From positions 31,248,001-31,312,000 of the forward strand of contig NC_092352.1 of NCBI RefSeq assembly GCF_963676685.1: a stretch of DNA of 64,000 nt, read 5' to 3'. Positions 588 through 61,000 of the stretch are shown here, piece by piece. The notes beneath the pieces are model-generated. The model did no database searches and was not told where the DNA came from. It saw only the letters and a program-made list of their open reading frames with translations. Each line of letters starts with the position of its first letter. Position 1 is the first letter of the stretch. Source of the stretch: Mytilus edulis. Its lineage: Eukaryota. The position numbers and the translations under genes were made by a program.

Positions 588-1760
588 ATGCAAATGCTCG
601 TACACAGCATGGGAATTATACAGCATATACTATTTTTTTGCTGTATCTTCTGTGTGTTAGGAGATAATATATCAACCTATAGGGACCTACATAATTTAGT
701 ATTTAAGGATTATGATGCAGAGATTCAACCTATGCCTACGGACAACGGGGAATTTAACATAAGTATAATTTTCCATTTGTTTGCCTTCAACAGCTTTAAC
801 GAAGTAGATGGTGTATTATCTGTAGTGGGCGCTATCACTTTTTTCTGGACAGATGAATCTCTAACATGGAACAAAACATTGTATGATGGAATCGACCAAA
901 TAATTGTACCACAGTCAAAGGTATGGACCCCTAAAGTGATTCTTGTAAATAGTGCTGATACTCTAGCATGGATCGGGTCTGACTCATCGTTTAACGTTCG
1001 GGTTACCAACGATGGCAGACTTCACTGGACACCAGGATCGGTGTTAAATGCCAAGTGCTCTGTTGATGTTCTAAAGTTTCCATTTGATTCTCATTCTTGT
1101 GAGTTACTTCTCTCTGGATTTGGGTATCACAACACTGTCAGACTTAAACCAATCAGCGCAACTACCGAGAACTCGCATCTTATTCTGAGTCAACTATGGG
1201 AGTTGGAAAGTACTTCGGTTGCAAATGATCTTGAACATGAAAGTTCTTTTGAGGTAGTTATAAATTTCAAGAGAAAACCAGTTTATTACACTGTTTTGGT
1301 GTTCACACCCACCGCTGTCTTAGCTTTGCTTAATCCTCTGATATTTATGTTACCTATAGAATGTGGCGAACGGTTGTCTTTTGGGATGACTATTCTGTTA
1401 TCATACATGGTGTTTTTAACACTGGTGTCTGATAAACTTCCAACCACATCAAATCCGATGTCCTTCATGGTTATTTACATTATACTATTGTTCGTGACCA
1501 GTGCATGCATAACCATGTGTAATATAATTAACATGAAGTTATATTGGTCTGAAGAGTCGGAAGCTACAGGGATTCAGGGATGTTTGATCTCTTTTTGCTC
1601 CAAATATCGCCAGAAGAACTCTATTTTAGATGTGAGCGACAAAAAAAGAAAACCAACAACCAAGGATTTTGTACGAATTCTTGATAAAGTTTATGTTTTT
1701 TTCTTTTATACAACTATATTGATAATATTTATAGCTTATCTAACCGTTACAGCTGTATGA
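588..1760 (+). CDS. Cys-loop ligand-gated ion channel subunit, nAChR-like non-alpha (gene 1), single-exon CDS
   Basis: Signal peptide (start could be ATG 609); WTPKVILVN; Cys-loop CSVDVLKFPFDSHSC; four TM helices; M1-M2 LPIECGERLSFGMTILLS; no YxCC. Confidence 0.93.
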   Translation: MQMLVHSMGIIQHILFFCCIFCVLGDNISTYRDLHNLVFKDYDAEIQPMPTDNGEFNISIIFHLFAFNSFNEVDGVLSVVGAITFFWTDESLTWNKTLYDGIDQIIVPQSKVWTPKVILVNSADTLAWIGSDSSFNVRVTNDGRLHWTPGSVLNAKCSVDVLKFPFDSHSCELLLSGFGYHNTVRLKPISATTENSHLILSQLWELESTSVANDLEHESSFEVVINFKRKPVYYTVLVFTPTAVLALLNPLIFMLPIECGERLSFGMTILLSYMVFLTLVSDKLPTTSNPMSFMVIYIILLFVTSACITMCNIINMKLYWSEESEATGIQGCLISFCSKYRQKNSILDVSDKKRKPTTKDFVRILDKVYVFFFYTTILIIFIAYLTVTAV

Positions 1761-4628
1761 AAGATGAAGAAGACGTTTTGATACTGAAGTAGAAATGCAA
1801 TGTATACTAGCATGATTTGTTTCTTGAGTCTTTTAATATAGATTTATTCTGCATCGTATTTTAGTTTTTATTTATCACAGATGGACACAAGGCTAACCAT
1901 AGGGCTACAACTACTTGCGGAAAGCTTTATATTTCAGAGGGTAGAAAACCTGTTTGGACGATCCATACCTTGTATACAAATTCCTTATGTTATGGAGTTG
2001 TCATATGTCCAACGTCCTTGACCTTATTGTTATGAACTGCTTAAAGTTATAGTTATTTTGCCATATGATTTTTTTCACTTATTGTGAAAAATAGGATAGC
2101 TGTATCTGTAAGCGATAGGTCAACTATGATTTGTGTATGGCATGATAACTGTAATGTGTGCTTTTTTGTCTGATCTTACTTTAACCTCATTTGCATGGTT
2201 CGTTGGTCAAGGTTGTTATGTTTTAATCCGTATCTCAAATCTCTTCATTAGTTTCGTTCCTCTCAAGCACTTTCTGGACCAACCTTCATCATGTAAGCTC
2301 AAATTGAAACTTATGAAAGTCACGAATGTTTTATCAGACTCCAACACGTGAAGATGTATTGACTATACGTAACTTGAAACAATAGTCATTTTTTAAGGTC
2401 AACTTTGTCTGATGGAGTTAAATAACAAAAATCCAGATAAACTTCTAATAGATCTATCAAAAGATAAAACACAAGAAACAAAACTATAATCTTATCATTA
2501 ATTTTACCAAGCTAATGCAAAGATCCAATGAACAACTTTTATTTGTATGCGCTTTGAAAACGACATCATATCTCAGCAAGTCACTATATCCGTTGCAAAA
2601 TTTGACCGATTTGTGATATCAAATTCTTTAACATAATACTTTTTAAATGAAATTAAATCAATTAAACTACAAAACGATTTGTTGAAAAAAATAAATTCCA
2701 CGTGTCTGTTTCTAGGCCAATAGGCGTGGTAATAAACCCTTTTGCACAAATAAAATAATACAGTTATAAGTACGCCTGGTTTATTTGCATGTCATCTTTT
2801 TGTATCATGTACTATTATAGACATCTACGCAAATAAAGTGTTGCACGTGTATTGGATTTCCATACGGATTAGCTTTTTTATTCTTCTAATCCTTTTTCTA
2901 GTTTCTAGTAAACAATTTATAAAATCAGATTACTGTTATTCGGTATAACCACAATCAAAATAGCTATAATATCTGGTATAGGTATATATCTTATTTTAAT
3001 CCTGCTATGATAATATTAAATTCAGACAGAACACCAATTAAGATTTACTTAACAATAAATTTAATGACAAAAACTTTCAATCCGATCCCCATTCTCCTTA
3101 ATGAAAATTCAATATTAGTTTCAGATTTTTTTTAGTAGAAAACAAAACATCATCCCTCAGAGTCAATGATCGTATTCTTCTGTAGTAAACGACAGTTATT
3201 CAATATATCTAGAAATAATAATCATGAAACAATATGTAACGATTGTCAAGTATTTCGAATCGTGATTCAAGGACAATCCAACTACAAAAAAAACAAAAAA
3301 ACTTTGTGTTATCCAAAAATTGTTTTGAATGTGCAAAATGAATACTAGAAAATTTCCTCAATAATACCGTGAACACAGTAACGAAATGTCAAATACAGTA
3401 CTTTTGTTGAAAACACAAAATGCGCACATTTATGTTTTGTAGCAGATAAGTGTTTCTGTTGTTCCGTTGTTTTCCTTTTACAATTAATGTGTTCTCCTCA
3501 ATTTAGGTTTATGACCCAGATTAGCTTCAGTTAAATCGATCTATGACTATTAATCAGCGGTATACTACTGTTGCATCTATTTATAACTTTATGCGAAAAA
3601 TGAACAAAGCAAACCATTCACGTGTTGATTTTTTTCATGGTCGCATTCCAACGCATCAACTGCATCTAAAACTAAACTGTCAGTGTGTCAGAAGATACTG
3701 AAAATTTAATTTGTTTTCTTCTGAAGGATGTTAAAATTATGTAATTACATGTTTGGTTGAAGACTCAATTGTGGTAGGTTGTGAGTTCGATCAACGGTTT
3801 GGTCGGTAAATTTATTATTTGTGTTCTATCCCTAATCGTAGCAACTTCGACTGTCTTGTTTTGCATGCATGTAATGCAAGCGACGCTATAAACCATTTCA
3901 ACACACCAGATTTCGCCCACGTTGAAGATAATATTATTTTTCGAGACTTTGGTCTCACGGTTCGTATCTTCGAAATAGATTAGCACGTAAACTGATGCTA
4001 TCCTTTACGTCTAACACTCAACACTATATATATTATAAGCAAAATAAGCCAATAATAACTATTTCTTGAGCAGCACATATGTCTTGTTTCGTTGATATAT
4101 CTTCTGGGAACTGTTAATACCTTACGAATTCTAAATTTGTATTCTAGTACAATATTTTGACATTGCGTAGAATTAAAACATTAAATCAAGAAATGTAATT
4201 TTGGTATCTTTCATTTACAACCCGAAGCGAAAGATAACCAACTAGTATGGGTTTAAAGTGTCTTGTACCAAATCAGGAATACGGCAGTTGTTATATGATA
4301 GTCCGGTTTTATGTATGTTGGGGTTTGTTATTATTGCAGTTCAGTATTTCTGTAGTACTGTTGTTTTCCTCTAATAAGTAGTTAATGTGTTCCCCTCGGT
4401 TAGAATGTAACCCGGATTTGTAATCTCTCAATCGATTTATGACTTTTGAGCAGTAGTATACTACTGTTGCCTTTAACTATAACTAAATCGGTAATTCAAT
4501 TCTTATTATGCACATTTCCCCATAGCGTTATTCTCTCGTTGAAAATCGTACAGTTTATGTATACATTCCTGTAACCAACTCGTTGTCTTTGTAACTTAAA
4601 TCAAGCCATTTGTATTGTATTTTGTACT

Positions 4629-11886: not shown

Positions 11887-14202
11887 TTAAGCTGCAGTCG
11901 CCAAGGGAACTAGGAAAAAGACTGACACAGTTAGTGTTCCTACGAGAAACATGATAAAGAAAAACCAGTCCAAAAGTTCTCCCACTGTCTTCCACTGAAT
12001 ATCATCTAAATCATAGTCATAATTGTACATAGGTGGCGTGTCGATGTCAATTTCTTCTGTTGGATCAGGTTCTATTTCTGGAGGATCCATATCGTTACGC
12101 CATTTTTTACATTTCCGACAAGTGAGAAACGATGTCAGATGTTTCAGCCATTTTGGTATCTCTATTGAATCGTCTTGATGGTAAACTCGCAGGGTCATTA
12201 TTGTTATAATAGTTGATAAAGCGCTCATAACCAACATTAGTGTAAGGAAGTAACAAAGAAGAGACATTGGCTGGGAGGCTTGTGGTAAATTTTCAGAAAC
12301 CATAGTGAGGAAAACTGCAAAAGTTAAGAATGCTGTGACGGCATAACCAACTCTTTCACCGGAGTCTGCTGGTAACAAAAATACCAAGCCGTTCAAAAGG
12401 CCTAGAATAACGATTGGAATCACCATATTGATTAGAAAATAACCAGGTCGTCGTTTCATTGTTAATGTGTAGGTTAGGTACGCTGCACTATTAAATGTTT
12501 CCTGGTCCACAGTAGTTGCTGCTAAATCCCATTCTACATTTGTTTGGTAGTAAGTCAGGTCTATGACATTTGTTGTATTTTCTAGAAACACCTACAAGAA
12601 ATAAGAATTCACAAACTGATGATAACAATTAGTATATATATTATATTGAGTTTTACAAATGATAATCACGATTTAGATTAAAAATTATTTTGTAAGAAGT
12701 GCTCTTTTGTGTCAACCTATTGTAACAATTCAGAAGGAACTCGTTTAATCGGACGATATACTGCTGACGGATAGGCTAGTTACTGTTAAGGAATGCTAAC
12801 ATATTTGGTTTAATTCGGATTTACATTTATGGTAATGATGTGGTCAAAGCTTCGGTAACTCAGTGAAGACTACAAAAAAGAAGGAAGTAAAGAAACGAAC
12901 CTGTGAAGCACCGACAATTTTCCAGAAATCTATGTATTAACCAGTCTTTTTATTAACTGTTAATTTTGTTTCATTCTTTAAATGCATAACATTAATGTAT
13001 TAATAACATAAACAACATATAAAATTGGTTGAACATGAGAGGGTTGGAAAAAAAAGTAAAATCACAAAAATACTGAACACCGAGGAAAATAACGACTTCT
13101 TGTTGAAACTACAAGTAAAAGCCGCAATAGTATAACAGTATTAAAAAGTCATAAATCGATTGAGAAAAAACAAATATGGGTTACGAAACAAAACCGAGGG
13201 AAACACATCATATATAAGATGAAAACAAAGGATCAACATAAACAGTACAACAAACCAACCATATAAGAGTATAAACATTGTAGCATAAATTGGTGCTCCC
13301 GTTTTGGACATCGATATTCACGTCTTAAATACACAAGGAGCATGGCATTCTTCATATGGCATCAATCGTGGATGTAAGCGTCTTGAGTAAAGTTTTGCAA
13401 TTATTTGTTGGAACTTAGTCTGTGAGCAGTACAATTAGTATCAAGACGAAAGAGCAATTTATAGTATGTTTAAATCAATATCATATATTATGAAAAGTGA
13501 TTTTTGTACTGTATTTATTTAAATCGATTTACCCTACGTTAATTATCATTCCTTTGAACAACCCAAAGCACACGAAAATACAAAAAAGGGGGAGAACAAG
13601 ATACGAGGTAACAGGAATATGTTTACATTAAATCATCTTCAATATTATATGCTATGGTAACGTACTTGATTGTCGTAATATCCCCATGGCGTAAACTTCA
13701 CCTTACACGACTGTGTGTCGAACGGATAGTATGAGACATCTACAGGACATCCCGTCTTGGACACAACACCAACTGTCCAGGAGTGCACACCAGTACTCGT
13801 TATCCTCATTTTATAACTAGTATGTCCTAATTCTTCCAAAGATTCTACAGAGTTAGACAAGACCAGAGACGGTTTCCAAAAATTATCCTGCGGTAACAAA
13901 ATCTCTGTCATAGGGTTAGTACCTGCTGTCCAGGTTAGCAAATCGTTTGTCCAGTTTACGTCTATAAAGCCAACGAGCTCCAATTGCCCTGCTATCTCGT
14001 CAAAGTTAGTAATTGCTATTAGGTAAAACTTCATATAAACCGTTAATTTGTCGGTCTGTGCCTCTTTGGGAAATATTTTTTTGTTGTAACTTGTGAATGT
14101 AGAACTGTCAAGAAAATTCTTAAAGTCGTCTGAAGACTGTGATGAAATTGGCACTAAGAAAGTATAAAACATACATAAAAACAAAAGATACTTGTTTGCC
14201 AT
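11887..14202 (-). CDS. nAChR-like non-alpha subunit (gene 2), two exons: complement(join(11887..12591,13666..14202)), about 413 aa
   Basis: Exon 1 runs MANKYLL...CPVDVSYYPFDTQSC...WGYYDNQ, then donor GTACGT at 13665. Acceptor ttcttgtag precedes 12591 and the frame continues VFLENTT...GERVGYAVTAFL...M4. Phase-0 intron of 1074 bp. Confidence 0.92.
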
Positions 14203-15541: not shown

Positions 15542-17625
15542 TTACGTTTCTGCAAAAGCTAATGGAAAATAGAAGAAAATGGCCACAACAATTGTCATAA
15601 TCAGGAATAAAAGGAAAAATGTCCAGTCTAAAACACCCCCTACATCTTTCCACTGCATCTCATCCCAGTCTGTGTATTCTTCTGTCACGCTCTCATCGTC
15701 CTCCTCTTTATCAAACTCGTCATCTCCCCATTCATCAGAACTGTCACCTATTTTGCTCTTTCGTTTCTTTTTAGAACAACAATTTTTACCCTTCTGGCAT
15801 TTAAGAAAGGATGTAACATGTTTCAGCCAAAGTGGAATTTCTGTAGCCTCTTCTTGAGAATATACTCTCAAAGTCAAGGTCGCCATGGCCATCGACAGAG
15901 AGCTCATAACCAGCATTAATGTCAGATATATGCTAAAAATTGTGATTGGACTTGACGAACGTGGAATGTTATCAGCTATCATTGTAATATAAATAACCAG
16001 TGATAAGAAGGTAACGACCGAGTAGGCAATTCGTTCTCCCGATTCTGCTGGCATCATGTATGAAAGACTGCTTAAAATACACAATATCAGGACCGGTAAG
16101 GCGTAATTGATAAGAACATTTCCGGGACGTCTGGAAATTTGTAGATTAAATGTTAAATATGATGCTCCATTAATTGTACTCATTGATATAGATGTTTGGT
16201 CAATCCACCACTGAACGTTTTCTGCAAAGTAGGTCAGCTCTATTGCAGAGGTAGAGTTCTCAAGTTTAACCTTTAAAGCAAAAAAGCAAAAAATGTAATC
16301 TTGCTTAAATGATAATGAACGTTTCCATTTTCAATCGACAATAAAAGAAAAAAAAATATACTAGTTTTAGTACATCTAAAGTTGATATACGATGCAAACT
16401 GTAGTGTATCCTAAACTTGTACGATGTCTGTACGATGCAAACTGTAGTGTATCCTAAACTTGTACGATGTCTGTACGATGTAAACTGTAGTGTAGTCTAC
16501 TCTTGTACGATGTATATATGATGTAAACTGTAGTAAGTTATACAGTTGTATGATGTAAAATGTAGTGTAGCCTACAAGTGTACGATGTCTGTATAATGCA
16601 ATGTAAACTATAATATAGTCTTCACTTGTATGATCTAAATACTCGCCTACACTTGTACGGTGTGTGAATCGAGGCCTATCTTTGTACGGTGTGAATAGTG
16701 TCATACACTTGTACGGTGTGAATTGTGGACTACATTTTTACGGTGTGAATTGTGGCCATCACTTGTACTTTGTGAAATGAAGCCTACAGTTTTACGATGC
16801 GATATATGGTCTTTAGTTGTGCGATGTGAGTTGCAGTCTACACTGTAACGATGTGAATTGTGGCTTACACTTGTACGATGTGAGATGTAGACAACAGTTT
16901 TACAATGTGAATTATAGCTTACACTTGTTCGATGTGAGTTGTTGCCTACACTTGTACGGTGTGAAGGCTACTGTTCATTATATAAAAGTAGACTACTTTA
17001 TATTATTTAGAAGCAGATAACTGTCCATTATATACAAGTAAGAAAAAATAGTTGCAAGCAAATGTAAGATATTTACCTGATCTTCCAAATAACCCAACGG
17101 TGTAAACTGTAGTTGGCATGTATGTGTATCGAATGGATAATGTGACATCGTAATTTTACAGCTAGTCTTTGATACTATTCCTACTTTCCATGTGTGCGTA
17201 CCGTCCTTATTTACTCGGATTTTATTACTCCTGTAACCTAACGTTTGAAGTGTTTCAACTGTATTGTGTATTGAAATTGGTGGCAACCAGACGTTGTCTT
17301 GAGCAATCATCATTTCATCTATACCGGCTGTCCATGCCGTCAACAAATCATTGGTCCAAGATGCTTCTATAAATCCAACTAAATGCATTTGTCCATGTGC
17401 TTCGTCCATCTTATTTATAGCAATTAGTGAATATTTCATGGAAACAATCATCTGATCGGATTGTGTTGCCTTTGGAAAAATCTTTTTATTGTAAGTTGTG
17501 AATTCCGTTCCTGATAGAAATCCTTGAAAATCTGTATGTGATGCACATAGTACTGTACTGGAAAACGTAGTTATCAAAATAACAGCAATATACATTGTTC
17601 TAATCATTTTCATTTCTTGGTTCAT
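15542..17625 (-). CDS. nAChR-like non-alpha subunit (gene 3), two exons: complement(join(15542..16270,17077..17625)), about 425 aa
   Basis: Exon 1 ends CKITMSHYPFDTHTC...LGYLEDQ with CAG|GTAAAT. Acceptor ttttgctttaaag precedes 16270; VKLENSTSAIELTYFAENVQW... is in frame with ORF 15542..16183. Phase-0 intron of 806 bp. Start codon uncertain among several Met. Confidence 0.9.
16385..16970. repeat. Degenerate minisatellite filling most of the gene 3 intron
   Basis: Recurrent CTTGTACGATGT / ACTGTAGTG motifs with a 30-40 bp period. Confidence 0.75.
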
Positions 17626-21581: not shown

Positions 21582-22919
21582 CTACTGGTAATAATGTGCA
21601 ATCAATGGCGTCATGAAAATCATAGTCAAAAGGAAATTGACAATAATAAATACAACAAAACATATTTTATCAAAGGTCCTTGCTACATGTTTCCATGTAA
21701 TTTCATAATCGTTCTTGTATACTTTATCATCTTTCCGGATAACAATAGGGGCAAAGTCTTCTTCGTATTCGGTTTGAAATTTCGGATGGGAAAAGAAGTT
21801 ATCGTCGTTGTCGTCATACTCCGATAAAGTCAGAGGAGTAACCTTGTTTTGGCGCGAAAGATCATCCTTGTGTTTGTTCTCATAGCAACCACAACATGCA
21901 ATAAAACGGACTATTCTTTGCGGAACCATATTTCGGGGGTCTTTACTGTGAATAGTCAATGATAAAATGGCTAGGTACGTAAGAACAGAAACGACAAGAA
22001 TCATCGTTGTAAAATAAAATGACAAAATAGACATCTGTGTCGACGACTTTGGCAATGATCCGGTGACCATAGCCATCAGAATTGATATTGAAAGAAAAAC
22101 AAACATGGCGAATCCGACCCTTTCTCCAGAACCTGACGGTACAAGGAATATGAGGTTACTCAAGAATACTAACATCAGAAAGGGTAAAAAATGAGTCAGC
22201 AAAAAGTATTTTGGATTTCTCTGCAGCGTTAGCTCGAAGTGTGCAAAAGATGTGCTCTCTTTGGTTTCCGTGTAAGGATCATGGGATTTAAGGCGCCATA
22301 ATTCATGCTCGTTATAGTATGAAGTGTCTAAACTTTCGTTGGTAATTGAAATATTAACTTCTGAATCCATGTAACCCCAAGGCGTAAAAGTTATGTTACA
22401 TTTTTGAGTATCAAAGGGGAAATAAGTTGAATCTACTTGACAGTTTGTTTTGGATACAATAGAAGGCGACCATTTCATTACTGCAGATTCATCTTTGGTT
22501 GGCATCGAGATCCTTACATCTGTATTGGCATCTCCAATCATTGAAATATTTGAATGTGAATTAAAAATGCTGATGGTTGGTACCCACACAACGTCTCGTG
22601 GCACAGAAATTTCAGTAACAAAAGGCGGACCGGACACAGCGGATATTAAGTCATCATCCCATGTAATATCCATGAGTCCATTTACCTCTAGATATCCATC
22701 TGCTTCATTAAATTCTCCGATACTCACAAGTGTGAAATTCACATCCACAGTTATCTGGTCACTTTGTTCTTTTTTGGGAAAGATTTCATCGACAAAACAA
22801 GTTGTACAAGTTATTGCATTTGTATAAAAATTTAAAATATCCTGATATGATGGCGCTCCTGCAACTGGATAAAAGTATAAAATCAAAGTTAAAATCAACA
22901 CTGTTTTAACCGTAGCCAT
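21582..22919 (-). CDS. nAChR-like non-alpha subunit (gene 4), single-exon CDS
   Basis: Signal peptide; CQVDSTYFPFDTQKC; FTPWGY; GSGERVGF; four TMs. Confidence 0.94.
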   Translation of the reverse strand: MATVKTVLILTLILYFYPVAGAPSYQDILNFYTNAITCTTCFVDEIFPKKEQSDQITVDVNFTLVSIGEFNEADGYLEVNGLMDITWDDDLISAVSGPPFVTEISVPRDVVWVPTISIFNSHSNISMIGDANTDVRISMPTKDESAVMKWSPSIVSKTNCQVDSTYFPFDTQKCNITFTPWGYMDSEVNISITNESLDTSYYNEHELWRLKSHDPYTETKESTSFAHFELTLQRNPKYFLLTHFLPFLMLVFLSNLIFLVPSGSGERVGFAMFVFLSISILMAMVTGSLPKSSTQMSILSFYFTTMILVVSVLTYLAILSLTIHSKDPRNMVPQRIVRFIACCGCYENKHKDDLSRQNKVTPLTLSEYDDNDDNFFSHPKFQTEYEEDFAPIVIRKDDKVYKNDYEITWKHVARTFDKICFVVFIIVNFLLTMIFMTPLIAHYYQ

Positions 22920-24569: not shown

Positions 24570-25976
24570 TTATTCTGTTGTAACACCGGTTGTTCCCAAC
24601 AAGAGGGGTAAAATGTAATAGCCCGAAATTATAAGTGTTCCGGACATGAAAATAAGAAACAATGTTTTATCTACAGTTCTCCCGACAACTGACCATGTTA
24701 TCCCATATCGGCATTCCTCTTCCTCTTCATCGTCGTCGGATACTTCATCGACATATTCCATTGGTTGCACCATCGACTCATCATCGGTGACGACAGAAGC
24801 GCCACTAGATAAATCGCGTTTGACCTCCGTAATATCGTTCTCCGTCATTTCTTTGGTCAATGTCTGTTTACTTTCAGAACGCTTTCTACGTTTAGGGGGC
24901 ATGAACTTTGATTTGCGACACAAGCGACATGTCAACAAACCAAATATGTAAACTAAAATCCATGGCACTGGGGTATTGTCCTCTTCCTTTGCATAAATTC
25001 TTAGGGACAAAATTGTTACGAATGTTGTTAAACTGCTGATGGATAGCATAATCACAAGATAATATACCATATTAGACATAGGTTTGGATGTTTCTGGGAG
25101 ACTTTGCGATACGATTGTCAAATAAACAGCAAACGTGAGAAAAATATTCGTTGCAAATCCCATTCTTTCTCCTGCTGTCGGTGGAAGTACAAATGATAAA
25201 GAGTTAAGAACACCCAGAAGTACAATCGGAATTATCATGTTTATCATGAAATAAATAGGCCGTCTTTTCACAGTTATAGATAGTGAGAGGATGGATCGAT
25301 TTGATAGACTTGTTGTGTTTATGGTCGAAGACAACAGCTCCCATTCCTGATTTTCAACGAATTGGTCCGTACGAGCATATGTCGTCGTCGGTAGGAACTC
25401 TATCTCGTGACTCTGATATCCCCAAGGTGTGAACAATATTTCGCACGTCTGCTCGTCGAACGGAAAGTCAGTGGTATCAACCGTGCATCCAGTTTTGGTA
25501 ACGATACCAATATTTAAGTCCACTTGACCATTAGTTAGAGTCAATGTTGCATCATACCCTCCTTTTATAAGTGGTGTTAGGCTGGACACTGAATTAAACA
25601 CGGTGACCGGTGGTAGCCATATATCATCTGACTGAAGATCAATCTCCATCAGAAGATGAGTTTTAGGAAGATAATTAAGAACTATATACTCGTCCAACCA
25701 TCTTACTTTCATTTTCATAATTAATAATAATGTTCCCGCCACTTCGTCAAACTCCGGAAGTTGTATCAAGCTGAACTGCAAGTCCACATACAATGTTTCA
25801 TTATTCCAAAGCATAGGAAGCACATTTTTGTCGTAAGATTTTAGAAATAAAGCACTCATCAACTTTCTCACGTGTGAAGCAGTTGGTATTGTTTGTGAAG
25901 AACAGTTAGTGCAGTCTAACTGGATAGAACTGTGTATCAGTGCTAGTAAAAGTAGACATGTCGGTAAAGCAGCCAT
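24570..25976 (-). CDS. nAChR-like non-alpha subunit (gene 5), single-exon CDS
   Basis: Signal peptide; CTVDTTDFPFDEQTC; FTPWGY; AGERMGF; four TMs; acidic M3-M4 loop. Confidence 0.94.
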   Translation of the reverse strand: MAALPTCLLLLALIHSSIQLDCTNCSSQTIPTASHVRKLMSALFLKSYDKNVLPMLWNNETLYVDLQFSLIQLPEFDEVAGTLLLIMKMKVRWLDEYIVLNYLPKTHLLMEIDLQSDDIWLPPVTVFNSVSSLTPLIKGGYDATLTLTNGQVDLNIGIVTKTGCTVDTTDFPFDEQTCEILFTPWGYQSHEIEFLPTTTYARTDQFVENQEWELLSSTINTTSLSNRSILSLSITVKRRPIYFMINMIIPIVLLGVLNSLSFVLPPTAGERMGFATNIFLTFAVYLTIVSQSLPETSKPMSNMVYYLVIMLSISSLTTFVTILSLRIYAKEEDNTPVPWILVYIFGLLTCRLCRKSKFMPPKRRKRSESKQTLTKEMTENDITEVKRDLSSGASVVTDDESMVQPMEYVDEVSDDDEEEEECRYGITWSVVGRTVDKTLFLIFMSGTLIISGYYILPLLLGTTGVTTE

Positions 25977-42602: not shown

Positions 42603-44009
42603 TCAGACATATCCCCCTTCCTTCAACATTGGATTCAAAAATACGTATGCAAGGTATGAATGGACAGCTATCGTTGCAAGGAACAGTAAATAATCAAAAG
42701 CCCGCGAAACTGTTACCCAGGTCATTTCTTCTGGAACCCTACAAAACCAGCAACGTTCTGAGCATGTCAACTTCTTTGTATACGGTGGTGGTTCTTCGAT
42801 TTCTTCACGTTTCTTCCATTTGTCCCATTTTACATTTGAGACCCCAAACTTGTGTTCTTGTGGTAGGTAGTAGACATCAAATTTTCGTTTTTTATCTGCA
42901 AAGTCATATGACGAAATAGATATACCATCTGGGTGAATCGTTGCTTTCTTTTCCCGCTTACATCTGCATACCATGCAACACATTGTACCAACTATGAACG
43001 CTACAACAGACGGTACTTTAAGGTCAACAGTCTTAAGATGTTGTCTGACAGTAAAAATAGAAATTATTGTTATTACACCACTAAAGGCCATTAAAATCAC
43101 GATATACAGTGACAAGGTAGACAGCGGATTAGATGTTCTAGGAAGATTATCACCAATAATTGTCAGAAAAACTGAGAATGTTAAATAAACAGTCATAGAA
43201 AAACCTACTCTACCATGATCTATTGGCATGAGGAATGCAAATCCATTTATGATTCCCAATAACAAAATAGGTGCAGCTAAAACTATTACAAAATACGTAG
43301 AACGACGCTTTAAGTGAATAGTAAACGACACATAGGTAGCTTTGCTTGTTGACTTAGTGCTTACTGTTGTAGTATTCATATCCCAGACAATGTTTTGAGC
43401 GAAGTCTGTCGTGTCAAGACTTGTAGAAGTAGTGGAAAGTGCTAATTCTTCCGGTGAATAATCAAGGTGCGACATATCAAATGAACATGTCTGTGAATCA
43501 AACGGAAAAAGTTCGATATTCACATCACAACCAGCCTTAATGATAAAAGCAGGCTTCCAGGTATGGGTGCCGTCAAATCTCACGTCAATTAGATCATTGT
43601 TAGTCCCAACGACGGAAAGCTGATCAACGCCATTGTACGTGTATATCGGTGGATACCAAAGATCAGACCGGGGTATTTTTGCTGTAGTGATGACATCTAT
43701 AACTCCCACTGGTTTTTCGGTCCATGTTAGAATTTCACTTTTCCAGGAAATTATGAAATTACCCACTAAGGTTATTGTTCCATCCCTATCAGAGAATTCT
43801 TGTATGTTGTCAAGTTTCATTGAAATACTCACATTAAGCTGGTCGGACTGGTTGTTCATAGGGAAACTAAGTTTGTTATAATCAGCAAATATCTTATTGT
43901 AAAAGAACTGCCAGTCTGATGCTAAAGTAACTCCGTTTGCAGTTTGGAAACATAACAAAAAGATGAAAAATCCTCCAAAGTTGAACGGTGATAATTTCTT
44001 GTCCGCCAT
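42603..44009 (-). CDS. nAChR-like non-alpha subunit (gene 7), single-exon CDS
   Basis: CDVNIELFPFDSQTC; four TMs; M1-M2 linker PIDHGRVGF without the -1' Glu. Confidence 0.93.
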   Translation of the reverse strand: MADKKLSPFNFGGFFIFLLCFQTANGVTLASDWQFFYNKIFADYNKLSFPMNNQSDQLNVSISMKLDNIQEFSDRDGTITLVGNFIISWKSEILTWTEKPVGVIDVITTAKIPRSDLWYPPIYTYNGVDQLSVVGTNNDLIDVRFDGTHTWKPAFIIKAGCDVNIELFPFDSQTCSFDMSHLDYSPEELALSTTSTSLDTTDFAQNIVWDMNTTTVSTKSTSKATYVSFTIHLKRRSTYFVIVLAAPILLLGIINGFAFLMPIDHGRVGFSMTVYLTFSVFLTIIGDNLPRTSNPLSTLSLYIVILMAFSGVITIISIFTVRQHLKTVDLKVPSVVAFIVGTMCCMVCRCKREKKATIHPDGISISSYDFADKKRKFDVYYLPQEHKFGVSNVKWDKWKKREEIEEPPPYTKKLTCSERCWFCRVPEEMTWVTVSRAFDYLLFLATIAVHSYLAYVFLNPMLKEGGYV

Positions 44010-49711: not shown

Positions 49712-49732
49712 TTAAACGAACAATACGAATAC

Positions 49733-50278: not shown

Positions 50279-51054
50279 TAACTAAATAAAAAAATATTGT
50301 TTGTATTGAAATCATGGCTTGTAATACAATGAAAATGAATCGCAAATTTGCTCCACATATATTCTTTGATTTAGTCACTAATTTTGTATCAAATCAAGAC
50401 AAAAGAATGTTCAATCGTTTGAAATATATATTTCTCTCACATGTACGACCTTCTACATTGTTAAATACGGCACGAAACGAGATGAGCAATTTAATTGTTT
50501 GGTATTTGTTTTGTGTCTTTCTCCACTGAACCAGAAGTATCAATGTTATCGACGGTGTAGGGGATATCATTGCATATCTCTGTGTCAAAAACTAAATAAA
50601 ACAATAGTACTTTAATTGTATAGTGACGTATATTTGATATTTTATTATCGTGTTGTACGAAACAATGAGGTAATCGAACTGGTCCTAAAATTAAAATACC
50701 ATTGTTTAAGAACCACCATGGTTTTATATCAATTGGTGTTTACTTAATGACGTCCATTGTCATAACATTCAAAACAAATAGTTATAACTGTAGAAATTTC
50801 AGTGTAAATGTTATACTGGGCACGTGTATTATTTGATTTTGATATACATTGTAATAAACAAATAGATTTAAAAAATAAAAGAACGAAAAAGCAAACTAGC
50901 ATAATTTAAAGGCACCATCCATATAATAGGACAAAGGTTCAAAAAGAAAAAAATGTGAGAGGGACAGAAAGAATAAACATAAAAATCATCAAGAGTAGAC
51001 TATAAAAATGGTTTTCTGTATATTTTATAATTTTTCTTTTAATAAGACATTAAT

Positions 51055-53546: not shown

Positions 53547-54881
53547 TCAGTTTGAAATAAAGTTTTCCTTTGCAAGATTGATCCAAGGATACATGAACAT
53601 GAGATACACACAGAAATTAAGAAAAAGAAATAAAAATAAGTAGAAAATGTCCATAGTCGATCCAACGGTTTTCCACTTTATTCGTGGAACTTTCTTCTCC
53701 TTTTCAATATCATCTTCCCCATCATCGTCTCTCCTGCGTTTGACTTTCACTTCCTTGACAAATGCCGATGCTGCTTGAAGTTTGAATCGTTTATTTAGAA
53801 TTCCATATCCCGACGGTGGTTTCCAGTCGCCGAGTGTTTTACCTCGACATGGGAAACACCACAACAATGAAACAAAACATGACAAGCATCCAGATACTTT
53901 AGACTTGCCATGTCGATGATAGATATGTAACGTAGACGATATATACGATAGAAGCATGATGTTCGTCAAAAACTGCCAATCAAGAAAATAAACTACAACC
54001 GGGATAGGAGATGTAGTTTTAGGTATTTCATCCGTGACAAGGTTTAAAACTATGGCAACAACAAGTGTTCCCGTAACGATATATCTTACTCTTGCTTGAT
54101 CGTATGGAATCATGAATGCAAGAATACTCATCACACCCGTTAGAAGGACCGGAACAATAAAATACATAGCAAAGAACGCCCCTCGACGCTGGATCTTTAT
54201 AGTATATTCCACTTTTGAGTACAATCCTAGAACATATGATGAAGAGGTTGACATAATATTCCAAGAAGGGTTTATAGCATACTGAGTGAGATCTATCGTG
54301 GCGTTCTCGACAGACGGATAAAGTGTGATCATTTCGCTTGTTATTTGCCAAGGTAAAAAGGATATAACACATTCGTGTGTATCAAAAGGATAGTATGTAG
54401 CATCCACTGAACAATATACTTCGAAATCAAAGTTAGTTTTATAGTAAATACTCCCGTCAGGTTTCAATACCACAGGCGTTGACGTATGACCAACACGAAC
54501 TAGGTCCTCCACCGAATTTGTCATGATAATGATAGGCATATAAACATCATCTTGTGATAAAGTGATATTTATAAGTGTTATTCCAGCATCTGTCAGAGGT
54601 TCTAGTATTAATTCATCCGTCCATTCCATTTCAATGAATCCCATTAATTCCAACACTGCAGCCTCTTCGTAGTATTCCTTGATTGCTGTTAAACCGAGGT
54701 TTATTGTAACCTGTAGTGGATCGTCCTGGATTAGTTTGGGACGTACTGCTGTATCATACTTTGTTTTAACTGCTGGTGGCTGGATAATGTCATCCAAAAA
54801 AGTCCCCACGTTCGTTGCAGTGTTTCCATAAATAACTGGTAAAATTCCAAATGCTATAAAGAAGATAAACTTATATTCCAT
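53547..54881 (-). CDS. Divergent nAChR-like non-alpha subunit (gene 8), single-exon CDS
   Basis: CSVDATYYPFDTHEC; four TMs; M1-M2 PYDQARVRY. Confidence 0.92.
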   Translation of the reverse strand: MEYKFIFFIAFGILPVIYGNTATNVGTFLDDIIQPPAVKTKYDTAVRPKLIQDDPLQVTINLGLTAIKEYYEEAAVLELMGFIEMEWTDELILEPLTDAGITLINITLSQDDVYMPIIIMTNSVEDLVRVGHTSTPVVLKPDGSIYYKTNFDFEVYCSVDATYYPFDTHECVISFLPWQITSEMITLYPSVENATIDLTQYAINPSWNIMSTSSSYVLGLYSKVEYTIKIQRRGAFFAMYFIVPVLLTGVMSILAFMIPYDQARVRYIVTGTLVVAIVLNLVTDEIPKTTSPIPVVVYFLDWQFLTNIMLLSYISSTLHIYHRHGKSKVSGCLSCFVSLLWCFPCRGKTLGDWKPPSGYGILNKRFKLQAASAFVKEVKVKRRRDDDGEDDIEKEKKVPRIKWKTVGSTMDIFYLFLFLFLNFCVYLMFMYPWINLAKENFISN

Positions 54882-55208
54882 TTTGAAATCTGCCTGAGAA
54901 GTGGAATTGAGTTCCTACTTGTAAATTTGTTCTGTTTTGATATTAAAACGACATTTAAAAACAAATACAATTTAAAAAATAGTAATGGCATGATCGCCTT
55001 AGAAAATCACAGTTCCATGTTAATAATTATCTAAACAACAAGTTTGCTCAAACACAATAACTTTCAATAGAATAGTATACAAAGTTAATTTACTAAATAA
55101 AATAAAACAATAAAGACATACCAAAGTCAGAAAATATGGTAACTTTATGATGTTCAATTAAATTGGATAGTTTTAATTCTTATTTTAACGTTTTAAACTT
55201 AATAGGAA

Positions 55209-56591
55209 ATGAAGTCTTCATTTGTTTTTACTGTGATTCTAGCAATGACCAAGTTTTCATTATTCAAGACACAGACGGAGTATCATGATAAATTCAGAAC
55301 CTACTTATCAGACGTGATTGAGAAAGAATCTGTACATGATGCAAGGATACGCCCGATGACAGATCAAGCAAACGCCGTAGATATTTCTGTGGAATTTCAG
55401 ATCATATCCATTAGTAAGCTTGATACCTTCTCCGGTTCCATGGATTTCGCTGGTAGATTAAAAATGAAATGGACAAGCGAAGAAGAAATAGTGCGTCCTG
55501 ATGAACAGAGAAACTGGTTGGACTTTGATGCAAGACTTGTGGAACAAGATAGTATCTGGACACCTGACATCACTGTTTATAACTCAATGGGCGAGCGGAA
55601 GCGACTTGGCGATTCGTCATTTCGTATTCAAATAGACATGGACGGTAGATGTGAATGGCTATTGGGAGTCGTTGATTCCACTTCTTGTACGTTTGATGTC
55701 ACTTTATTTCCGTTCGACAAACCAATCTGTAACATCGTGTTCACTACATGGAAATACAAAGCTGCCGAAGTTCTATTATCTGCTCTCAATGATAGTGTCG
55801 ATATGTCATTATACAATGAAAATAGTGAATGGACGATAGTTAATACTACCTCAAATCTAACAATTCAAAACGAGGTTTCATATCTAAACTATACGATTTA
55901 CTTTAAACGTGAAGCTGGGTTTGTTTTAGTGAATATGATTCTTCCCGTAATAGTAGTTTCCTTGCTAAATGCATTAGTATTTTTAGTTCCTGCAGAATCA
56001 GGAGAACGGTTAACTTATGCCGTTTTATTGTTTTTATGGTTTGCTGTTTATCTTGATATCATTTCCACAAACTTGCCTATATCGTCTGATAATATGTCCA
56101 ATTTATCTCTATTCGTCATTTCGATGGTTGGGTTAAGTATTTTAACGATATTTTTAGATGTTATTAGTGTAATGTTGTACAATCGCGATGACAAAAAACA
56201 AGTGCCTTGGTGTATTGAAGGTTTTGTTCGATGTTTACGCTGTCGGTGTGGTGGTAGTAATCGTAATCGAATTATTCCTTTCGAAGACGTTGAATCATTT
56301 GATCAGAACGGTGACACACAGATGCTAAACGGAAAAGCGCCGACGACTGTAGCGCTTGGCACGAAAAGTAATAACAAAGTAGAATTAAGACTGAGAGACT
56401 TTGAAATGCCGAGGGATGATTTAAAAAGAAAAGAAAACATTGAAAATGAACCTAGGAAGAGAAAATCAGATGAAGTTGATTGGAAAGTCGTATCTGTTAC
56501 ATTTGATTATATATGTTTTATATTAACCCTGCTTTGTACTTTAGGACTTTGTGGTTACTTTCTTGTTCCTTTAGTAACTGCAAATTCATAG
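55209..56591 (+). CDS. nAChR-like non-alpha subunit (gene 9)
   Basis: WTPDITVYN; CTFDVTLFPFDKPIC; PAESGERLTY; four TMs. Confidence 0.94.
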   Translation: MKSSFVFTVILAMTKFSLFKTQTEYHDKFRTYLSDVIEKESVHDARIRPMTDQANAVDISVEFQIISISKLDTFSGSMDFAGRLKMKWTSEEEIVRPDEQRNWLDFDARLVEQDSIWTPDITVYNSMGERKRLGDSSFRIQIDMDGRCEWLLGVVDSTSCTFDVTLFPFDKPICNIVFTTWKYKAAEVLLSALNDSVDMSLYNENSEWTIVNTTSNLTIQNEVSYLNYTIYFKREAGFVLVNMILPVIVVSLLNALVFLVPAESGERLTYAVLLFLWFAVYLDIISTNLPISSDNMSNLSLFVISMVGLSILTIFLDVISVMLYNRDDKKQVPWCIEGFVRCLRCRCGGSNRNRIIPFEDVESFDQNGDTQMLNGKAPTTVALGTKSNNKVELRLRDFEMPRDDLKRKENIENEPRKRKSDEVDWKVVSVTFDYICFILTLLCTLGLCGYFLVPLVTANS

Positions 56592-56752: not shown

Positions 56753-56848
56753 TTTCAATATCACACACCGTGTCAATTCCAAACTTTCAATATCACACAC
56801 CGTGTCAATTCCAAACTTTCAATATCACACACCGTGTCAATTCCAAAC
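56753..56848. repeat. 32-bp tandem repeat x3 downstream of gene 9
   Basis: Unit TTTCAATATCACACACCGTGTCAATTCCAAAC. Confidence 0.9.
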
Positions 56849-59716: not shown

Positions 59717-61000
59717 ATGGTTGCAAAATTAATTGTTTTCCTCCTAATCTTCACATATTTTGGATTAGCGGGATCAAAAGACTTGAATGAACTGAAGGAC
59801 CTGTTATACTTGTCACATTACGGCCCTGACAATCCGTACGACTCGAGGATATTTCCATGCCACTTTGAGTACTGTCTTGTTGGAGTAGAACTAAGTTTTC
59901 AACCGAAGTCGATAACAGGATTTGTTATGGAGACGGGAATTCTGTCGCTGACTGGTAAAATATCTTTATCATGGGTTGATGAAAACATCGGAGAATGGAT
60001 GATTGGTTCCGAGCACAGCAGCATTACCGAAATGATTTTACCGGAAGATTATCTATGGCTTCCTACAATAACTGTTTACAATACGGTTAAAGAATTCAAA
60101 ATGATAAGCGATCCAAGCCATAAAGTGCGAATTTTGCCTATATCCGGAACAGGAACTCAGTCCCCCATTGAATGGGTGACAACTCTTATAACAGATATAC
60201 CATGCGTCATAAATGTTAAATATTATCCATTTGATGAACAGACATGCGAAATTGTTTTCACGCCATGGGGTTATAACGTTTCAGAGGTATATCTTTACAC
60301 AGCAGACGACGTGTTGAATACAGCCCAATACGAAGTAAACGAAGAATGGACTATGGAAGCTGGGGCTGCATCTAACTATTCTGTTGATGGAATTTCTTAC
60401 CTTAAATATGAGTTTAAACTTAAGAGGAAATATTTGTGGTTCTTTATAAATATGGTAGCACCGATCATTTTACTAAGTATGTTGACAGCTTTTGTAAACA
60501 TGATTCCTGTTGATTGTGGCGAACGACTAACTTTTCTTCTGACCATATTTCTAGGACTTGCGTTTTATATGGACATGGTTCAAAGAACAATACCGAGAAC
60601 ATCAAACCCAATGCCTTTTATTTCATTCTATCTAACAGGTATGGTTTACCTCAATTCGTTTGCTATCATAATCAACATCTTTCTGATGAGGATTTACAAC
60701 AAAGACCCCGATTCAACTGTTCCAGTGGCGGTTAGATGTTTCATCGCAACGCTCACTTGGCGATGGTGCTGTCCCAAAAAAGTCAAACCGGATCCGGATG
60801 CTGTCCAGCCAATCGAAACTGACAAGGAACACACCATTCCAGTAGAAACAATCACTCTAGCACCTATGGAGAGAATAGACTGGCGAACAACAGGAATAGC
60901 ATTAGACATTCTTTTCTTCTACGTATTTACTTTTATGCATGTGCTTTGTTCCATTCTGTTTCTAGTGCCACTTTCACAAGGGGCAATTTACAATATTTAG
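59717..61000 (+). CDS. nAChR-like non-alpha subunit (gene 10), single-exon CDS
   Basis: First ATG at 59717 (MVAKLIVFLL signal peptide; the ORF track used an upstream TTG); CVINVKYYPFDEQTC; PVDCGERLTF; four TMs. Confidence 0.93.
   Translation: MVAKLIVFLLIFTYFGLAGSKDLNELKDLLYLSHYGPDNPYDSRIFPCHFEYCLVGVELSFQPKSITGFVMETGILSLTGKISLSWVDENIGEWMIGSEHSSITEMILPEDYLWLPTITVYNTVKEFKMISDPSHKVRILPISGTGTQSPIEWVTTLITDIPCVINVKYYPFDEQTCEIVFTPWGYNVSEVYLYTADDVLNTAQYEVNEEWTMEAGAASNYSVDGISYLKYEFKLKRKYLWFFINMVAPIILLSMLTAFVNMIPVDCGERLTFLLTIFLGLAFYMDMVQRTIPRTSNPMPFISFYLTGMVYLNSFAIIINIFLMRIYNKDPDSTVPVAVRCFIATLTWRWCCPKKVKPDPDAVQPIETDKEHTIPVETITLAPMERIDWRTTGIALDILFFYVFTFMHVLCSILFLVPLSQGAIYNI

What the first reader, a model, noticed from the sequence alone, without database searches (positions are those of the whole stretch)
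588..61000. Ten-gene array of divergent nAChR-like channels lacking the ACh site: candidate bivalve chemosensory receptor cluster
Seen: ten intact paralogues in about 60 kb, none pseudogenised despite heavy TE load, mostly with single-exon CDSs. All keep the Cys-loop and M2 9' Leu, but none has the loop C YxCC. The beta9-beta10 segment is about 6 residues shorter than in alpha7 (e.g. EWDLAATTVDQETFNSAAYLTY; alpha7 compared from memory). The loop B Trp is replaced in genes 1, 3, 6 and 7 (SGFGY, TPLGY, ISFGH, SHLDY), and the loop A Tyr survives only in genes 7, 9 and 10. Known: bivalves have large, often intronless nAChR expansions, and cephalopod chemotactile receptors are tandem, intronless, ACh-insensitive nAChR derivatives. 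Inference: this array encodes a non-cholinergic, possibly combinatorial, sensory receptor repertoire. The expansion itself is not new, but its function is open.
Basis: partly seen in the sequence, partly recalled or inferred. Interest (0 to 1): 0.85.

Follow-up and report, generated by a model that had tools for sequence, protein, structure and literature searches.

The report
Ancient mussel nicotinic-like channel gene array
This stretch of a blue-mussel chromosome holds ten intact genes for nicotinic-receptor-like ion channels without the usual acetylcholine pocket; they are one example of a bivalve gene expansion already described, the array is old and kept in order across distant bivalves, and the proposed taste or smell role remains untested.

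Summary
The window (Mytilus edulis, chromosome piece C9) carries exactly ten intact Cys-loop channel genes, eight of them single-exon and two (g2, g3) with one shared phase-0 intron. There are no decayed copies. All ten keep the Cys-loop and the 9' Leu, and none has the loop C Cys pair.

Three results change the reading.
- These traits are not special to this array. None of 20 other high-scoring single-exon loci in the genome has the Cys pair or the loop A Tyr, and 18 have the same short loop C. The scan has flagged the same pattern on at least eight other pieces of this genome.
- The array is ancient. Genes g2-g10 form one clade, and nearly every gene has its own counterparts in oysters, pearl oysters, ark clams or scallops, with gene order kept. 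Octopus taste receptors instead show lineage-specific expansion and positive selection in the pocket.
- The genes are no closer to cephalopod chemotactile receptors (21-24% identity) than to vertebrate nAChR or 5-HT3A subunits.

Best reading: conserved orphan non-alpha channel subunits. A sensory role is possible but unsupported.

The parts
588..1760 (+). g1: single-exon Cys-loop subunit, 390 aa, short intracellular loop. It lies outside the g2-g10 clade and is nearest to g11.
   Evidence: Pfam LBD 1.3e-34 plus TM region. Loop A is V, loop B F and loop D A. Its nearest relative outside Mytilus is P0138, 48% identical.
11887..14202 (-). g2: two-exon subunit, 413 aa (exon 1 14202-13666, intron, exon 2 12591-11887). 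RefSeq XP_071129574.1, named 'alpha-7-like'.
   Evidence: Pfam on each exon. Splice sites CAA|GTACGT and TTGTAG|GTG. Both exons are 100% identical to P0281. It is sister to g3.
15542..17625 (-). g3: two-exon subunit, 425 aa (exon 1 17625-17077, exon 2 16270-15542). RefSeq XP_071129576.1, named 'unc-29-like'. Loop B Trp is replaced by Leu. The intron holds a satellite-like repeat.
   Evidence: Pfam. Splice sites CAG|GTAAAT and AAAG|GTT at the same phase-0 position as in g2. Both exons are 100% identical to P0274.
21582..22919 (-). g4: single-exon subunit, 445 aa, on a long branch. 20' is Gly.
   Evidence: Pfam. Its counterparts in other Mytilus are 97-100% identical: P0247 (M. coruscus) and P0245 (an older M. 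edulis assembly). Only Mytilus orthologues are placed securely.
24570..25976 (-). g5: single-exon subunit, 468 aa. It has the best-conserved orthologue group.
   Evidence: Pfam. Identity is 95% to M. coruscus, 74-78% to another mytilid and 44-47% to Pinctada, Saccostrea and Crassostrea. The AlphaFold model has mean pLDDT 76 and a full pLGIC fold.
34470..35921 (-). g6: single-exon subunit, 483 aa, with a duplicated Cys-rich N-terminal motif. Loop B Trp is replaced by Phe in Mytilus only.
   Evidence: Pfam. Oyster and ark-clam orthologues keep the Trp. Orthologues are P0050 and P0023 (Saccostrea, 41-42%) and P0256 (M. californianus).
42603..44009 (-). g7: single-exon subunit, 468 aa. Loop B Trp is replaced by Leu in mytilids. 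The -1' Glu is missing (DHG-R).
   Evidence: Pfam. The whole g7 group lacks the GE(R) Glu. Orthologues include the Crassostrea gigas protein XP_034312890 (cluster of P0074) and the Pinctada protein P0069.
53547..54881 (-). g8: single-exon subunit, 444 aa, with an unusual filter (Q-A-R, Arg at 2'). It sits head-to-head with g9, with 327 bp between the start codons.
   Evidence: Pfam. M2 reads DQARVRY in Mytilus but DQGRVGF in the non-mytilid orthologue P0055. The Mytilus stem branch in the C-half tree is very long, 2.10.
55209..56591 (+). g9: single-exon subunit, 460 aa. It keeps loop A Tyr, loop B Trp and a Tyr198-like Tyr. 10' is Trp and 16' is Asp.
   Evidence: Pfam and alignments. The g9-group proteins P0064 and P0199 lie on the same ENA contigs as the g8-group proteins P0055 and P0198.
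59717..61000 (+). g10: single-exon subunit, 427 aa. It keeps loop A Tyr and loop B Trp. 16' is Asp and 20' is Arg.
   Evidence: Pfam. The orthologue P0054 (Saccostrea echinata, 40%) has an accession two away from that of the g6 orthologue.

Best explanation
The window holds an old, syntenic array of ten working genes for divergent non-alpha subunits of pentameric Cys-loop (nicotinic-family) ion channels. An eleventh gene lies 57 kb downstream. The array is one of many such arrays in the documented bivalve nAChR expansion.

Shown:
- Each gene encodes a signal peptide, a beta-sandwich ligand-binding domain with an intact Cys-loop, four membrane helices and a 9' Leu gate.
- Eight of the ten window genes, and g11, carry the cation-type G-E-R filter. 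g7 and g8 lack the -1' Glu.
- No gene has the loop C Cys pair or the loop D Trp.
- Each of the eight g2-g10 lineages was already separate before mussels, oysters, pearl oysters, ark clams and scallops diverged. Each has since been kept in about one copy, in the same neighbourhood.

Inferred:
- The subunits are non-redundant.
- They most likely co-assemble with one another into heteropentameric, mostly cation-permeable channels.
- Those channels are opened by something other than acetylcholine bound in a classical aromatic box. The ligand is unknown, and the tissue is unknown.
For: - Domains and intact ORFs. The splice models agree with RefSeq proteins.
- The pLGIC fold is modelled with confidence for g5. 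The best structural matches are nAChR epsilon, alpha7 and beta2 at Z 29-31.
- Binding-site and pore residues.
- Purifying constraint. Identity is 89-100% in every domain across four or five Mytilus species. Intact orthologues at 34-49% identity exist in other bivalve orders.
- Two trees built on non-overlapping column sets both recover the g2-g10 clade, with SH-aLRT 91 and 98. Both recover the same per-gene orthologue groups.
- Gene order is conserved.
  - The Tegillarca fused model P0036 reads g6-like, g5-like, g2-like, the same order as on the window's minus strand.
  - Accession numbers are consecutive in M. coruscus, M. trossulus and Saccostrea echinata.
  - One 48.7-kb ENA contig carries members of the g5, g8 and g9 groups plus the oyster-only group.
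- The phenomenon is known: Jiao et al. 2019 (PMC6896357) describe 99-217 nAChR genes per bivalve, mostly intron-poor and in tandem arrays of up to 12. In C. gigas only 33 of 132 are alpha-type.
Against: - No expression, assembly or ligand data were obtainable, so co-assembly within the array and non-cholinergic gating are inferences.
- A partial aromatic cage persists. Loop B Trp is kept in 6 of 10 genes and a Tyr198-like aromatic in 8 of 10. g9 and g10 also keep the loop A Tyr. Binding of acetylcholine, choline or another amine at some interface is therefore not excluded.
- Vertebrate structural subunits that bind no agonist would look similar from sequence.
- In the g5 group, loops C, D and F are the least conserved parts of the ectodomain (mean pairwise identity 0.31-0.43, against 0.48 for the background). 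This fits either relaxed constraint or ligand adaptation.
- The non-Mytilus counterpart of g4 is unresolved, because the two trees disagree on the scallop sequence P0053.
Confidence: 0.6

Rival explanations
1. Chemosensory repertoire. The subunits form externally facing receptors in mantle edge, gill, palps, foot or larval sensory cells. They would detect environmental cues combinatorially, like cephalopod chemotactile receptors.
For: - The genes are intron-poor and tandem, and their ACh site is degenerate, as reported for CRs (PMC11526382).
- The loops lining the pocket (C, F, D) are the most variable parts of the g5 ectodomain.
- Published work raises alternative ligands, and an ionotropic chemosensory role, for divergent molluscan nAChR clades (PMC6896357; PMC13174522).
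- Gill shows the highest nAChR expression in bivalves (PMC6896357).
Against: - The array is evolutionarily static. The orthologue groups are old and mostly single-copy, and the only duplication seen in Mytilus is g2/g3. This contrasts with the lineage-specific expansion and positively selected pocket residues of octopus CRs (PMC11526382; 10.1101/2025.03.03.641191).
- There is no special affinity to CRs. CRB1 scores Z 24.2 at 21% identity and CRT1 Z 23.1 at 24% identity, below nAChR, 5-HT3A and GABA-A chains. No CR appears among the top 60 PDB sequence matches of the family profile.
- The diagnostic traits are shared by 20 of 20 sampled paralogues elsewhere in the genome, so they carry no information specific to this array.
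- There is no expression evidence.
Confidence: 0.15
2. Accessory or complementary subunits of ordinary cholinergic receptors. These non-alpha subunits would co-assemble with alpha subunits encoded elsewhere. They would tune ACh-gated channels without forming agonist sites themselves, as vertebrate beta1, beta3 and alpha5 do.
For: - All ten are non-alpha (no CC) and have short loop C hairpins, as non-alpha subunits do.
- The best sequence and structure matches are canonical nAChR subunits.
- Loops A and B and the Cys-loop are conserved, while loops C and F are relaxed.
- Long-term single-copy retention suits fixed stoichiometric partners.
- From general knowledge of nAChRs, structural subunits can lack the loop D Trp.
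Against: - The genome appears to hold hundreds of such non-alpha genes. There were 494 LBD candidates, and all 150 scored pass the Pfam cut-off.
- None of the 20 best single-exon loci sampled is alpha-type. That is a large excess for an accessory role.
- Some bivalve nAChR genes are expressed before ChAT and the nervous system appear (PMC6896357).
- The related lophotrochozoan orphan Alpo4 forms homopentamers and does not respond to ACh or serotonin (PMC10338036).
Confidence: 0.22
3. Neutrally drifting retrocopies: intronless duplicates with no function that happen still to be open.
For: - Most are intronless, which fits a retroposition origin.
- Jiao et al. report more unexpressed genes among intron-poor nAChRs (PMC6896357).
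Against: - All ten ORFs are intact, with no frameshift or fragment.
- Identity is 89-100% across Mytilus species.
- Orthologues with the full domain set exist in four other bivalve orders.
- The Cys-loop, pore and M1-M3 are strongly conserved.
Confidence: 0.02

Closest known systems
Bivalve/lophotrochozoan intron-poor nAChR expansion (Jiao et al. 2019, PMC6896357; molluscan clades in PMC13174522)
   Same: The genes are intronless or have one intron, and they sit in tandem arrays (up to 12 genes are reported). They are mostly non-alpha, with divergent binding residues. Arrays shared by oyster and pearl oyster were already described. This array is an instance of that expansion.
   Different: Here the array is traced gene by gene across five pteriomorph orders, and it is slow-evolving rather than a lineage-specific burst. 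I could not tell whether it is the very array shown in Fig. 5 of that paper.
Cephalopod chemotactile receptors CRT1/CRB1 (PDB 9e6b, 8eiz; van Giesen 2020 and Allard 2023, as summarised in PMC11526382)
   Same: Both are nAChR-derived, intron-poor and tandemly arranged, with a non-cholinergic-looking pocket and the pentameric channel fold.
   Different: - Identity is only 21-24%, no higher than to vertebrate nAChR or 5-HT3A.
- CRs expanded within cephalopod lineages, with positive selection on pocket residues. These genes instead form old, mostly single-copy orthologue groups.
- Sensory expression and hydrophobic ligands are shown for CRs and unknown here.
Alpo4, orphan nAChR-like receptor of the annelid Alvinella pompejana (PDB 8bx5; PMC10338036)
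   Same: It is a lophotrochozoan nAChR-family channel without the loop C Cys pair. It does not respond to ACh or serotonin, and its ligand is unknown. The family profile matches it at 1.3e-59, and g5 at Z 24.6.
   Different: Alpo4 keeps the aromatic cage, including the loop D Trp and the loop C tyrosines. The mussel genes have lost the loop D Trp and have a loop C about six residues shorter.
Canonical non-alpha nAChR subunits (human beta2/beta4, muscle beta/delta/epsilon) and their clustered genes
   Same: These are the best sequence and structure matches. They also have no vicinal Cys pair. Clustered subunit genes that co-assemble are known from vertebrates (general knowledge).
   Different: - A true beta-like gene in the same genome scores 9e-123 to human beta2, against about 1e-33 for g5.
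- The loop D Trp that canonical complementary subunits contribute is absent.
- Loop C is shorter (27 against 33 residues).

Membership tests
Cys-loop pentameric ligand-gated channel, nicotinic branch (Pfam PF02931 + PF02932) | Ligand-binding domain followed by a four-helix transmembrane region | tested here: met
   Both Pfam domains are found in all ten genes. The LBD is above the cut-off in all, and the TM domain is just below it in g8 and g9. The g5 model shows the beta-sandwich plus M1-M4. The best PDB matches are nAChR chains at Z about 30.
Cys-loop pentameric ligand-gated channel, nicotinic branch (Pfam PF02931 + PF02932) | Cys-loop disulphide pair 13 residues apart with the FPFD core, and a 9' Leu in M2 | tested here: met
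   Both are present in all ten genes and in g11.
Alpha-type nAChR subunit | Vicinal Cys-Cys (YxCC) at the tip of loop C | tested here: not met
   No gene has CC in the beta9-beta10 segment, and the segment is 26-27 residues against 33.
Canonical acetylcholine site (aromatic box) | Loop A Tyr, loop B Trp and loop C Tyr190/Tyr198 on the principal face, with loop D Trp on the complementary face | tested here: not met
   - Loop D Trp: 0 of 10.
- Loop A Tyr: 3 of 10.
- Loop B Trp: 6 of 10.
- Tyr190 equivalent: not an aromatic residue in the g5 alignment to alpha1.
- Tyr198 equivalent: Tyr or Phe in 8 of 10.
. The box is partial, never complete.
Canonical beta (non-alpha) nAChR subunit orthologues | High similarity to, and grouping with, beta2/beta4-type subunits | tested here: not met
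   The same genome's beta-like gene hits human beta2 at 9e-123, while g5 reaches about 1e-33. The beta-like sequences lie far outside the array clade. The trees were rooted on that beta-like gene, so the E-value gap is the main evidence.
Bivalve intron-poor nAChR expansion (Jiao et al. 2019) | 0-2 introns, tandem arrangement, non-alpha, many paralogues per genome | tested here: met
   Eight genes are single-exon and two have one intron. The genome scan found 494 LBD candidates, and all 150 scored pass the cut-off, many of them in arrays. The 20 sampled paralogues share the same traits.
Cephalopod chemotactile receptors | Membership of the CR clade in a phylogeny | tested here: inconclusive
   No CR sequence could be brought into a tree. 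Indirectly, CRB1 and CRT1 are no closer than vertebrate nAChR or 5-HT3A and are absent from the top 60 profile matches. A 2026 preprint reports a 'CR-like' clade that includes bivalves (PMC13174522), but I could not map these genes onto it.
Cephalopod chemotactile receptors | Lineage-specific expansion with diversifying selection on pocket residues | tested here: not met
   The orthologue groups are old and mostly single-copy, with conserved gene order. dN/dS itself could not be computed, because no orthologue DNA was available and dS between g2 and g3 is saturated.
Cephalopod chemotactile receptors | Expression in peripheral sensory epithelium and gating by poorly soluble environmental molecules | not testable with these tools
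There is no electrophysiology.

The most novel reading that the evidence does not exclude
The g2-g10 array could encode the subunits of a receptor system that is older than the split of the pteriomorph bivalve orders, is not cholinergic, and has been kept as a co-regulated unit. Subunits would mix to give channels of different ligand and ion selectivity. This would include the head-to-head g8/g9 pair, and the g7/g8 lineage that lost the -1' Glu. The channels would respond to a conserved non-ACh signal, either an environmental cue or an unrecognised endogenous transmitter.
Probability: 0.2. Interest if true: 0.7.

Novelty: new member of a known kind. Interest (0 to 1): 0.3.

Why it matters
Bivalves carry hundreds of nicotinic-like channel genes whose ligands are unknown, and the question of what they sense is open. 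This array does not answer it, but it offers a good entry point. It is a small set of non-redundant subunits, each with an identifiable counterpart in mussels, oysters, pearl oysters, ark clams or scallops. A ligand or tissue found in one species could therefore be tested in the others. The slow, orthologous mode of evolution also warns against reading every intronless nAChR-like array as a fast-evolving chemoreceptor family on the octopus model.

Tried and rejected
  - The other two, with g9 and with an alignment of g5 orthologues, returned no relative.
  - No dN/dS between species could therefore be computed.
- **dN/dS within the window.** Between g2 and g3, NG86 gives dN about 0.43 with dS undefined, which means saturation.
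- **Allelic copy.** A search for an allelic or haplotig copy of g4-g5 in the assembly found only an interspersed repeat.
- **Spliced transcripts.** I looked for spliced g2/g3 transcripts among Logan-derived proteins. Only annotated spliced proteins and Logan ORFs matching the unspliced genomic exons were listed, so this gives no transcript evidence.
- **Joined models.** I never searched with a joined g2 or g3 protein. Both were searched and aligned exon by exon. The trees were built on two separate column sets, before and after the intron site, so no joined model was needed.
- **CR phylogeny.** No CR sequence was obtainable as a tool object, and the Allard 2023 and van Giesen 2020 papers are not held.
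- **Rejected readings.**
  - Pseudogenes are ruled out by the conservation data.
  - Canonical beta orthologues are ruled out by the E-value gap.
  - The ORF at 49684-50358 is not a gene, because its 'DUF3432' hit comes from a translated minisatellite.
- **Not used.** Complex prediction was not run. A pass between two pLGIC ectodomains would not separate the hypotheses.

Full report
**What is there**

The window is G000:C9:31248001-31312000 of a 1.37-Gb genome. I take it to be Mytilus edulis for two reasons. Proteins on a contig of exactly that contig's length (88,296,451 bp) are RefSeq M. edulis entries. Both exons of g2 and of g3 are also 100% identical to two of those entries.

ORF listing and Pfam show ten Cys-loop receptor genes.
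- Eight are single ORFs: g1, g4, g5, g6, g7, g8, g9 and g10.
- Two, g2 and g3, have one intron each. Both introns have GT/AG sites and sit at the same phase-0 position, just after loop B.
- The spliced lengths I predict, 413 and 425 aa, equal those of XP_071129574.1 and XP_071129576.1.
- tblastn with every paralogue finds nothing else in the window, so there are no relics.
- Within 100 kb on each side there is one more paralogue, g11. It lies at C9:31368443-31369621 on the minus strand and is nearest to g1.
- Paralogues are 24-35% identical to one another, and g2 and g3 are 48% identical.

I aligned the genes with a canonical beta-like subunit from the same genome (L001, which hits human beta2 at 9e-123). 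Every claim holds.
- The Cys-loop and the 9' Leu are present in all ten genes.
- No gene has the loop C Cys pair.
- The beta9-beta10 segment is 26-27 residues, against 33 in the beta-like subunit.
- Loop A Tyr is present only in g7, g9 and g10.
- Loop B Trp is replaced in g1, g3, g6 and g7.

I add three points.
- The complementary-face loop D Trp is missing from all ten genes. It is Phe in g2, g3, g6 and g8, and non-aromatic in the others.
- g7 and g8 lack the -1' Glu of the cation filter.
- The cage is not wholly gone. Six genes keep the loop B Trp, and eight have Tyr or Phe at the alpha1 Tyr198-equivalent position (mapping applied to the equal-length loops). g9 and g10 keep three of the principal-face aromatic residues.

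**How special is this?**

It is not special within this genome.
- The Pfam LBD scan of the genome gave 494 candidates. All 150 that were scored pass the cut-off. Most are single open frames of about 400 aa, and many stand in arrays of four to seven.
- I fetched the 20 best-scoring single-exon loci elsewhere in the genome.
  - 0 of 20 have the Cys pair.
  - 0 of 20 have the loop A Tyr.
  - 4 of 20 have the loop D Trp.
  - 18 of 20 have the short loop C.
  - 19 of 20 keep the loop B Trp.
- The 'lost ACh site' is therefore the default state of the mussel's intronless expansion. Only the loop B losses are unusual.
- The scan's own notes list at least eight other pieces of this genome with the same description. 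One follow-up reached a like verdict.
- The expansion, its intron-poor tandem arrays and its mostly non-alpha make-up were published by Jiao et al. 2019 (PMC6896357). That paper already suggests that diverse LBDs may bind diverse ligands.
- A 2026 preprint proposes that divergent molluscan nAChR clades may add an ionotropic arm to chemosensation (PMC13174522).

A homologue search for g5 found 95% identity in M. coruscus, 74-78% in another mytilid, and 44-47% in Pinctada, Saccostrea and Crassostrea. A profile of the single-exon genes, run against 1.84 billion representatives, gave 3,818 hits below 1e-30. For most window genes there was a distinct nearest relative outside Mytilus, at 34-48% identity.

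I built two maximum-likelihood trees on non-overlapping columns, one before and one after the g2/g3 intron site. This meant no joined model was needed. The second tree is the quick tree, because the careful search did not finish in time. Both trees show the following.
- g2-g10 and their relatives form one clade, with SH-aLRT 91 and 98.
- The same orthologue groups appear in both trees.
  - g5 groups with oysters, a pearl oyster and an ark clam.
  - g6 groups with Saccostrea and Tegillarca.
  - g7 groups with Pinctada and with a cluster that includes Crassostrea gigas.
  - g10 groups with Saccostrea.
  - g8 and g9 each group with a non-mytilid sequence.
  - g2 and g3 are a Mytilus duplication, sister to Saccostrea, Argopecten and Tegillarca genes.
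- g1 and g11 lie outside the clade.
- g4 has a long branch and only Mytilus partners are placed securely. By position, its oyster counterpart may be the oyster-only group that follows the g5-like gene in a fused C. virginica model.

Gene order is kept in other species.
- A fused Tegillarca model reads g6-like, g5-like, g2-like, as on the window's minus strand.
- Accession numbers of the orthologues are consecutive in M. coruscus, M. trossulus and S. echinata.
- One 48.7-kb contig of a pearl-oyster-like species carries members of the g5, g8 and g9 groups and of the oyster-only group.

Within Mytilus, all domains are 89-100% identical between species, and M1-M3 is 96-100% identical. These are constrained, non-redundant genes.

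**Relation to known receptors**

- The g5 model has mean pLDDT 76 and a disordered intracellular loop.
- It matches nAChR epsilon, alpha7 and beta2 at Z 29-31 and 5-HT3A at Z 27.
- Alpo4 scores Z 24.6, squid CRB1 Z 24.2 (21% identity) and octopus CRT1 Z 23.1 (24% identity).
- The family profile ranks canonical nAChR chains first and Alpo4 at 1.3e-59. No CR appears in the top 60.
- There is therefore no special tie to cephalopod CRs.
- The mode of evolution also differs. CRs expanded within cephalopod lineages and show positive selection on pocket residues (PMC11526382; 10.1101/2025.03.03.641191).

**Mechanism**

The shown facts are the domain architecture, the gate, the filters, the loss of both faces of the classical site, the constraint and the synteny.

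The rest is inference. These are subunits of pentameric, mostly cation-permeable channels that do not use a classical ACh box. Because eight lineages have each been kept singly for so long, side by side, I think co-assembly among them is the likeliest arrangement. The head-to-head g8/g9 pair, with 327 bp between start codons, hints at shared regulation.

Within the g5 group, loops A and B and the Cys-loop are more conserved than the rest of the ectodomain (mean pairwise identity 0.77, 0.55 and 0.66, against 0.48). Loops C, D and F are less conserved (0.31-0.43). This fits either a relaxed non-binding face or an adapting pocket, and does not decide between them.

The accessory-subunit rival stays alive at about 0.2, and the sensory reading at about 0.15.

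**What could not be done**

There was therefore no read evidence and no orthologue DNA for dN/dS.
- Between g2 and g3, dS is saturated.
- No CR sequence was available for a joint tree.

**Verdict**

They are a typical, already-annotated part of a published expansion. The sensory interpretation is an untested analogy that the evolutionary pattern mildly disfavours. The modest new point is the deep conservation and synteny of this particular array.

Noticed in passing
window 54882-55208: g8 (minus strand) and g9 (plus strand) are head-to-head, with only 327 bp between their start codons. This may be a shared bidirectional promoter. Members of the g8 and g9 groups also share contigs in another bivalve.
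   Followed up: partly
window 53547-54881 and 42603-44009 (M2 regions): The whole g7 and g8 orthologue groups lack the -1' Glu of the G-E-R filter (E-G-R or H-G-R in the g7 group, Q-G-R or Q-A-R in the g8 group). The extra Ala at -1' and Arg at 2' are seen only in Mytilus g8; the non-mytilid orthologue P0055 reads DQGRVGF. The Mytilus g8 transmembrane half sits on a very long branch.
   Followed up: partly
window 35780-35921 (g6 N-terminus): g6 begins with a duplicated Cys-rich motif (..VNAVPCNKN.. occurs twice). Orthologues in M. galloprovincialis, trossulus, coruscus and californianus are 16 aa shorter (467 against 483 aa), which fits an indel of one repeat unit.
   Followed up: no
window 49684-50358 (-): This 224-aa ORF, which hits Pfam DUF3432, is a translated minisatellite: a 17-aa (51-bp) unit, SFPSCITVYNCGVRV, repeated about 12 times. 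It is not a gene.
   Followed up: yes
window 16400-16990 (g3 intron): The g3 intron is largely a satellite-like run of degenerate units of about 40-60 bp (..cacatcgtacaagtgtagg..).
   Followed up: no
window about 23245-23720: An intergenic element of about 470 bp between g4 and g5 is 90-92% identical to very many copies on all chromosomes (4,453 first-look candidates). It is probably a SINE or MITE.
   Followed up: no
window 36775-37866 (+): A 363-aa ORF has a weak match to the Mutator-family transposase (PF00872, 4.5e-05). It is probably a transposon remnant between g6 and g7.
   Followed up: no
G000:C9:31368443-31369621 (-), L009:6443-7618: An eleventh paralogue, g11 (391 aa counted from its Met), lies 57 kb beyond the window. 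It is 35% identical to g1 and 92.5% identical to a M. trossulus protein whose accession follows those of the array.
   Followed up: partly
g5 loop C, window about 25290-25330: An N-x-S/T glycosylation sequon (N-R-S) near the tip of loop C is kept in g5 orthologues from mussels, oysters and pearl oysters. A glycan there could affect access to the pocket.
   Followed up: no
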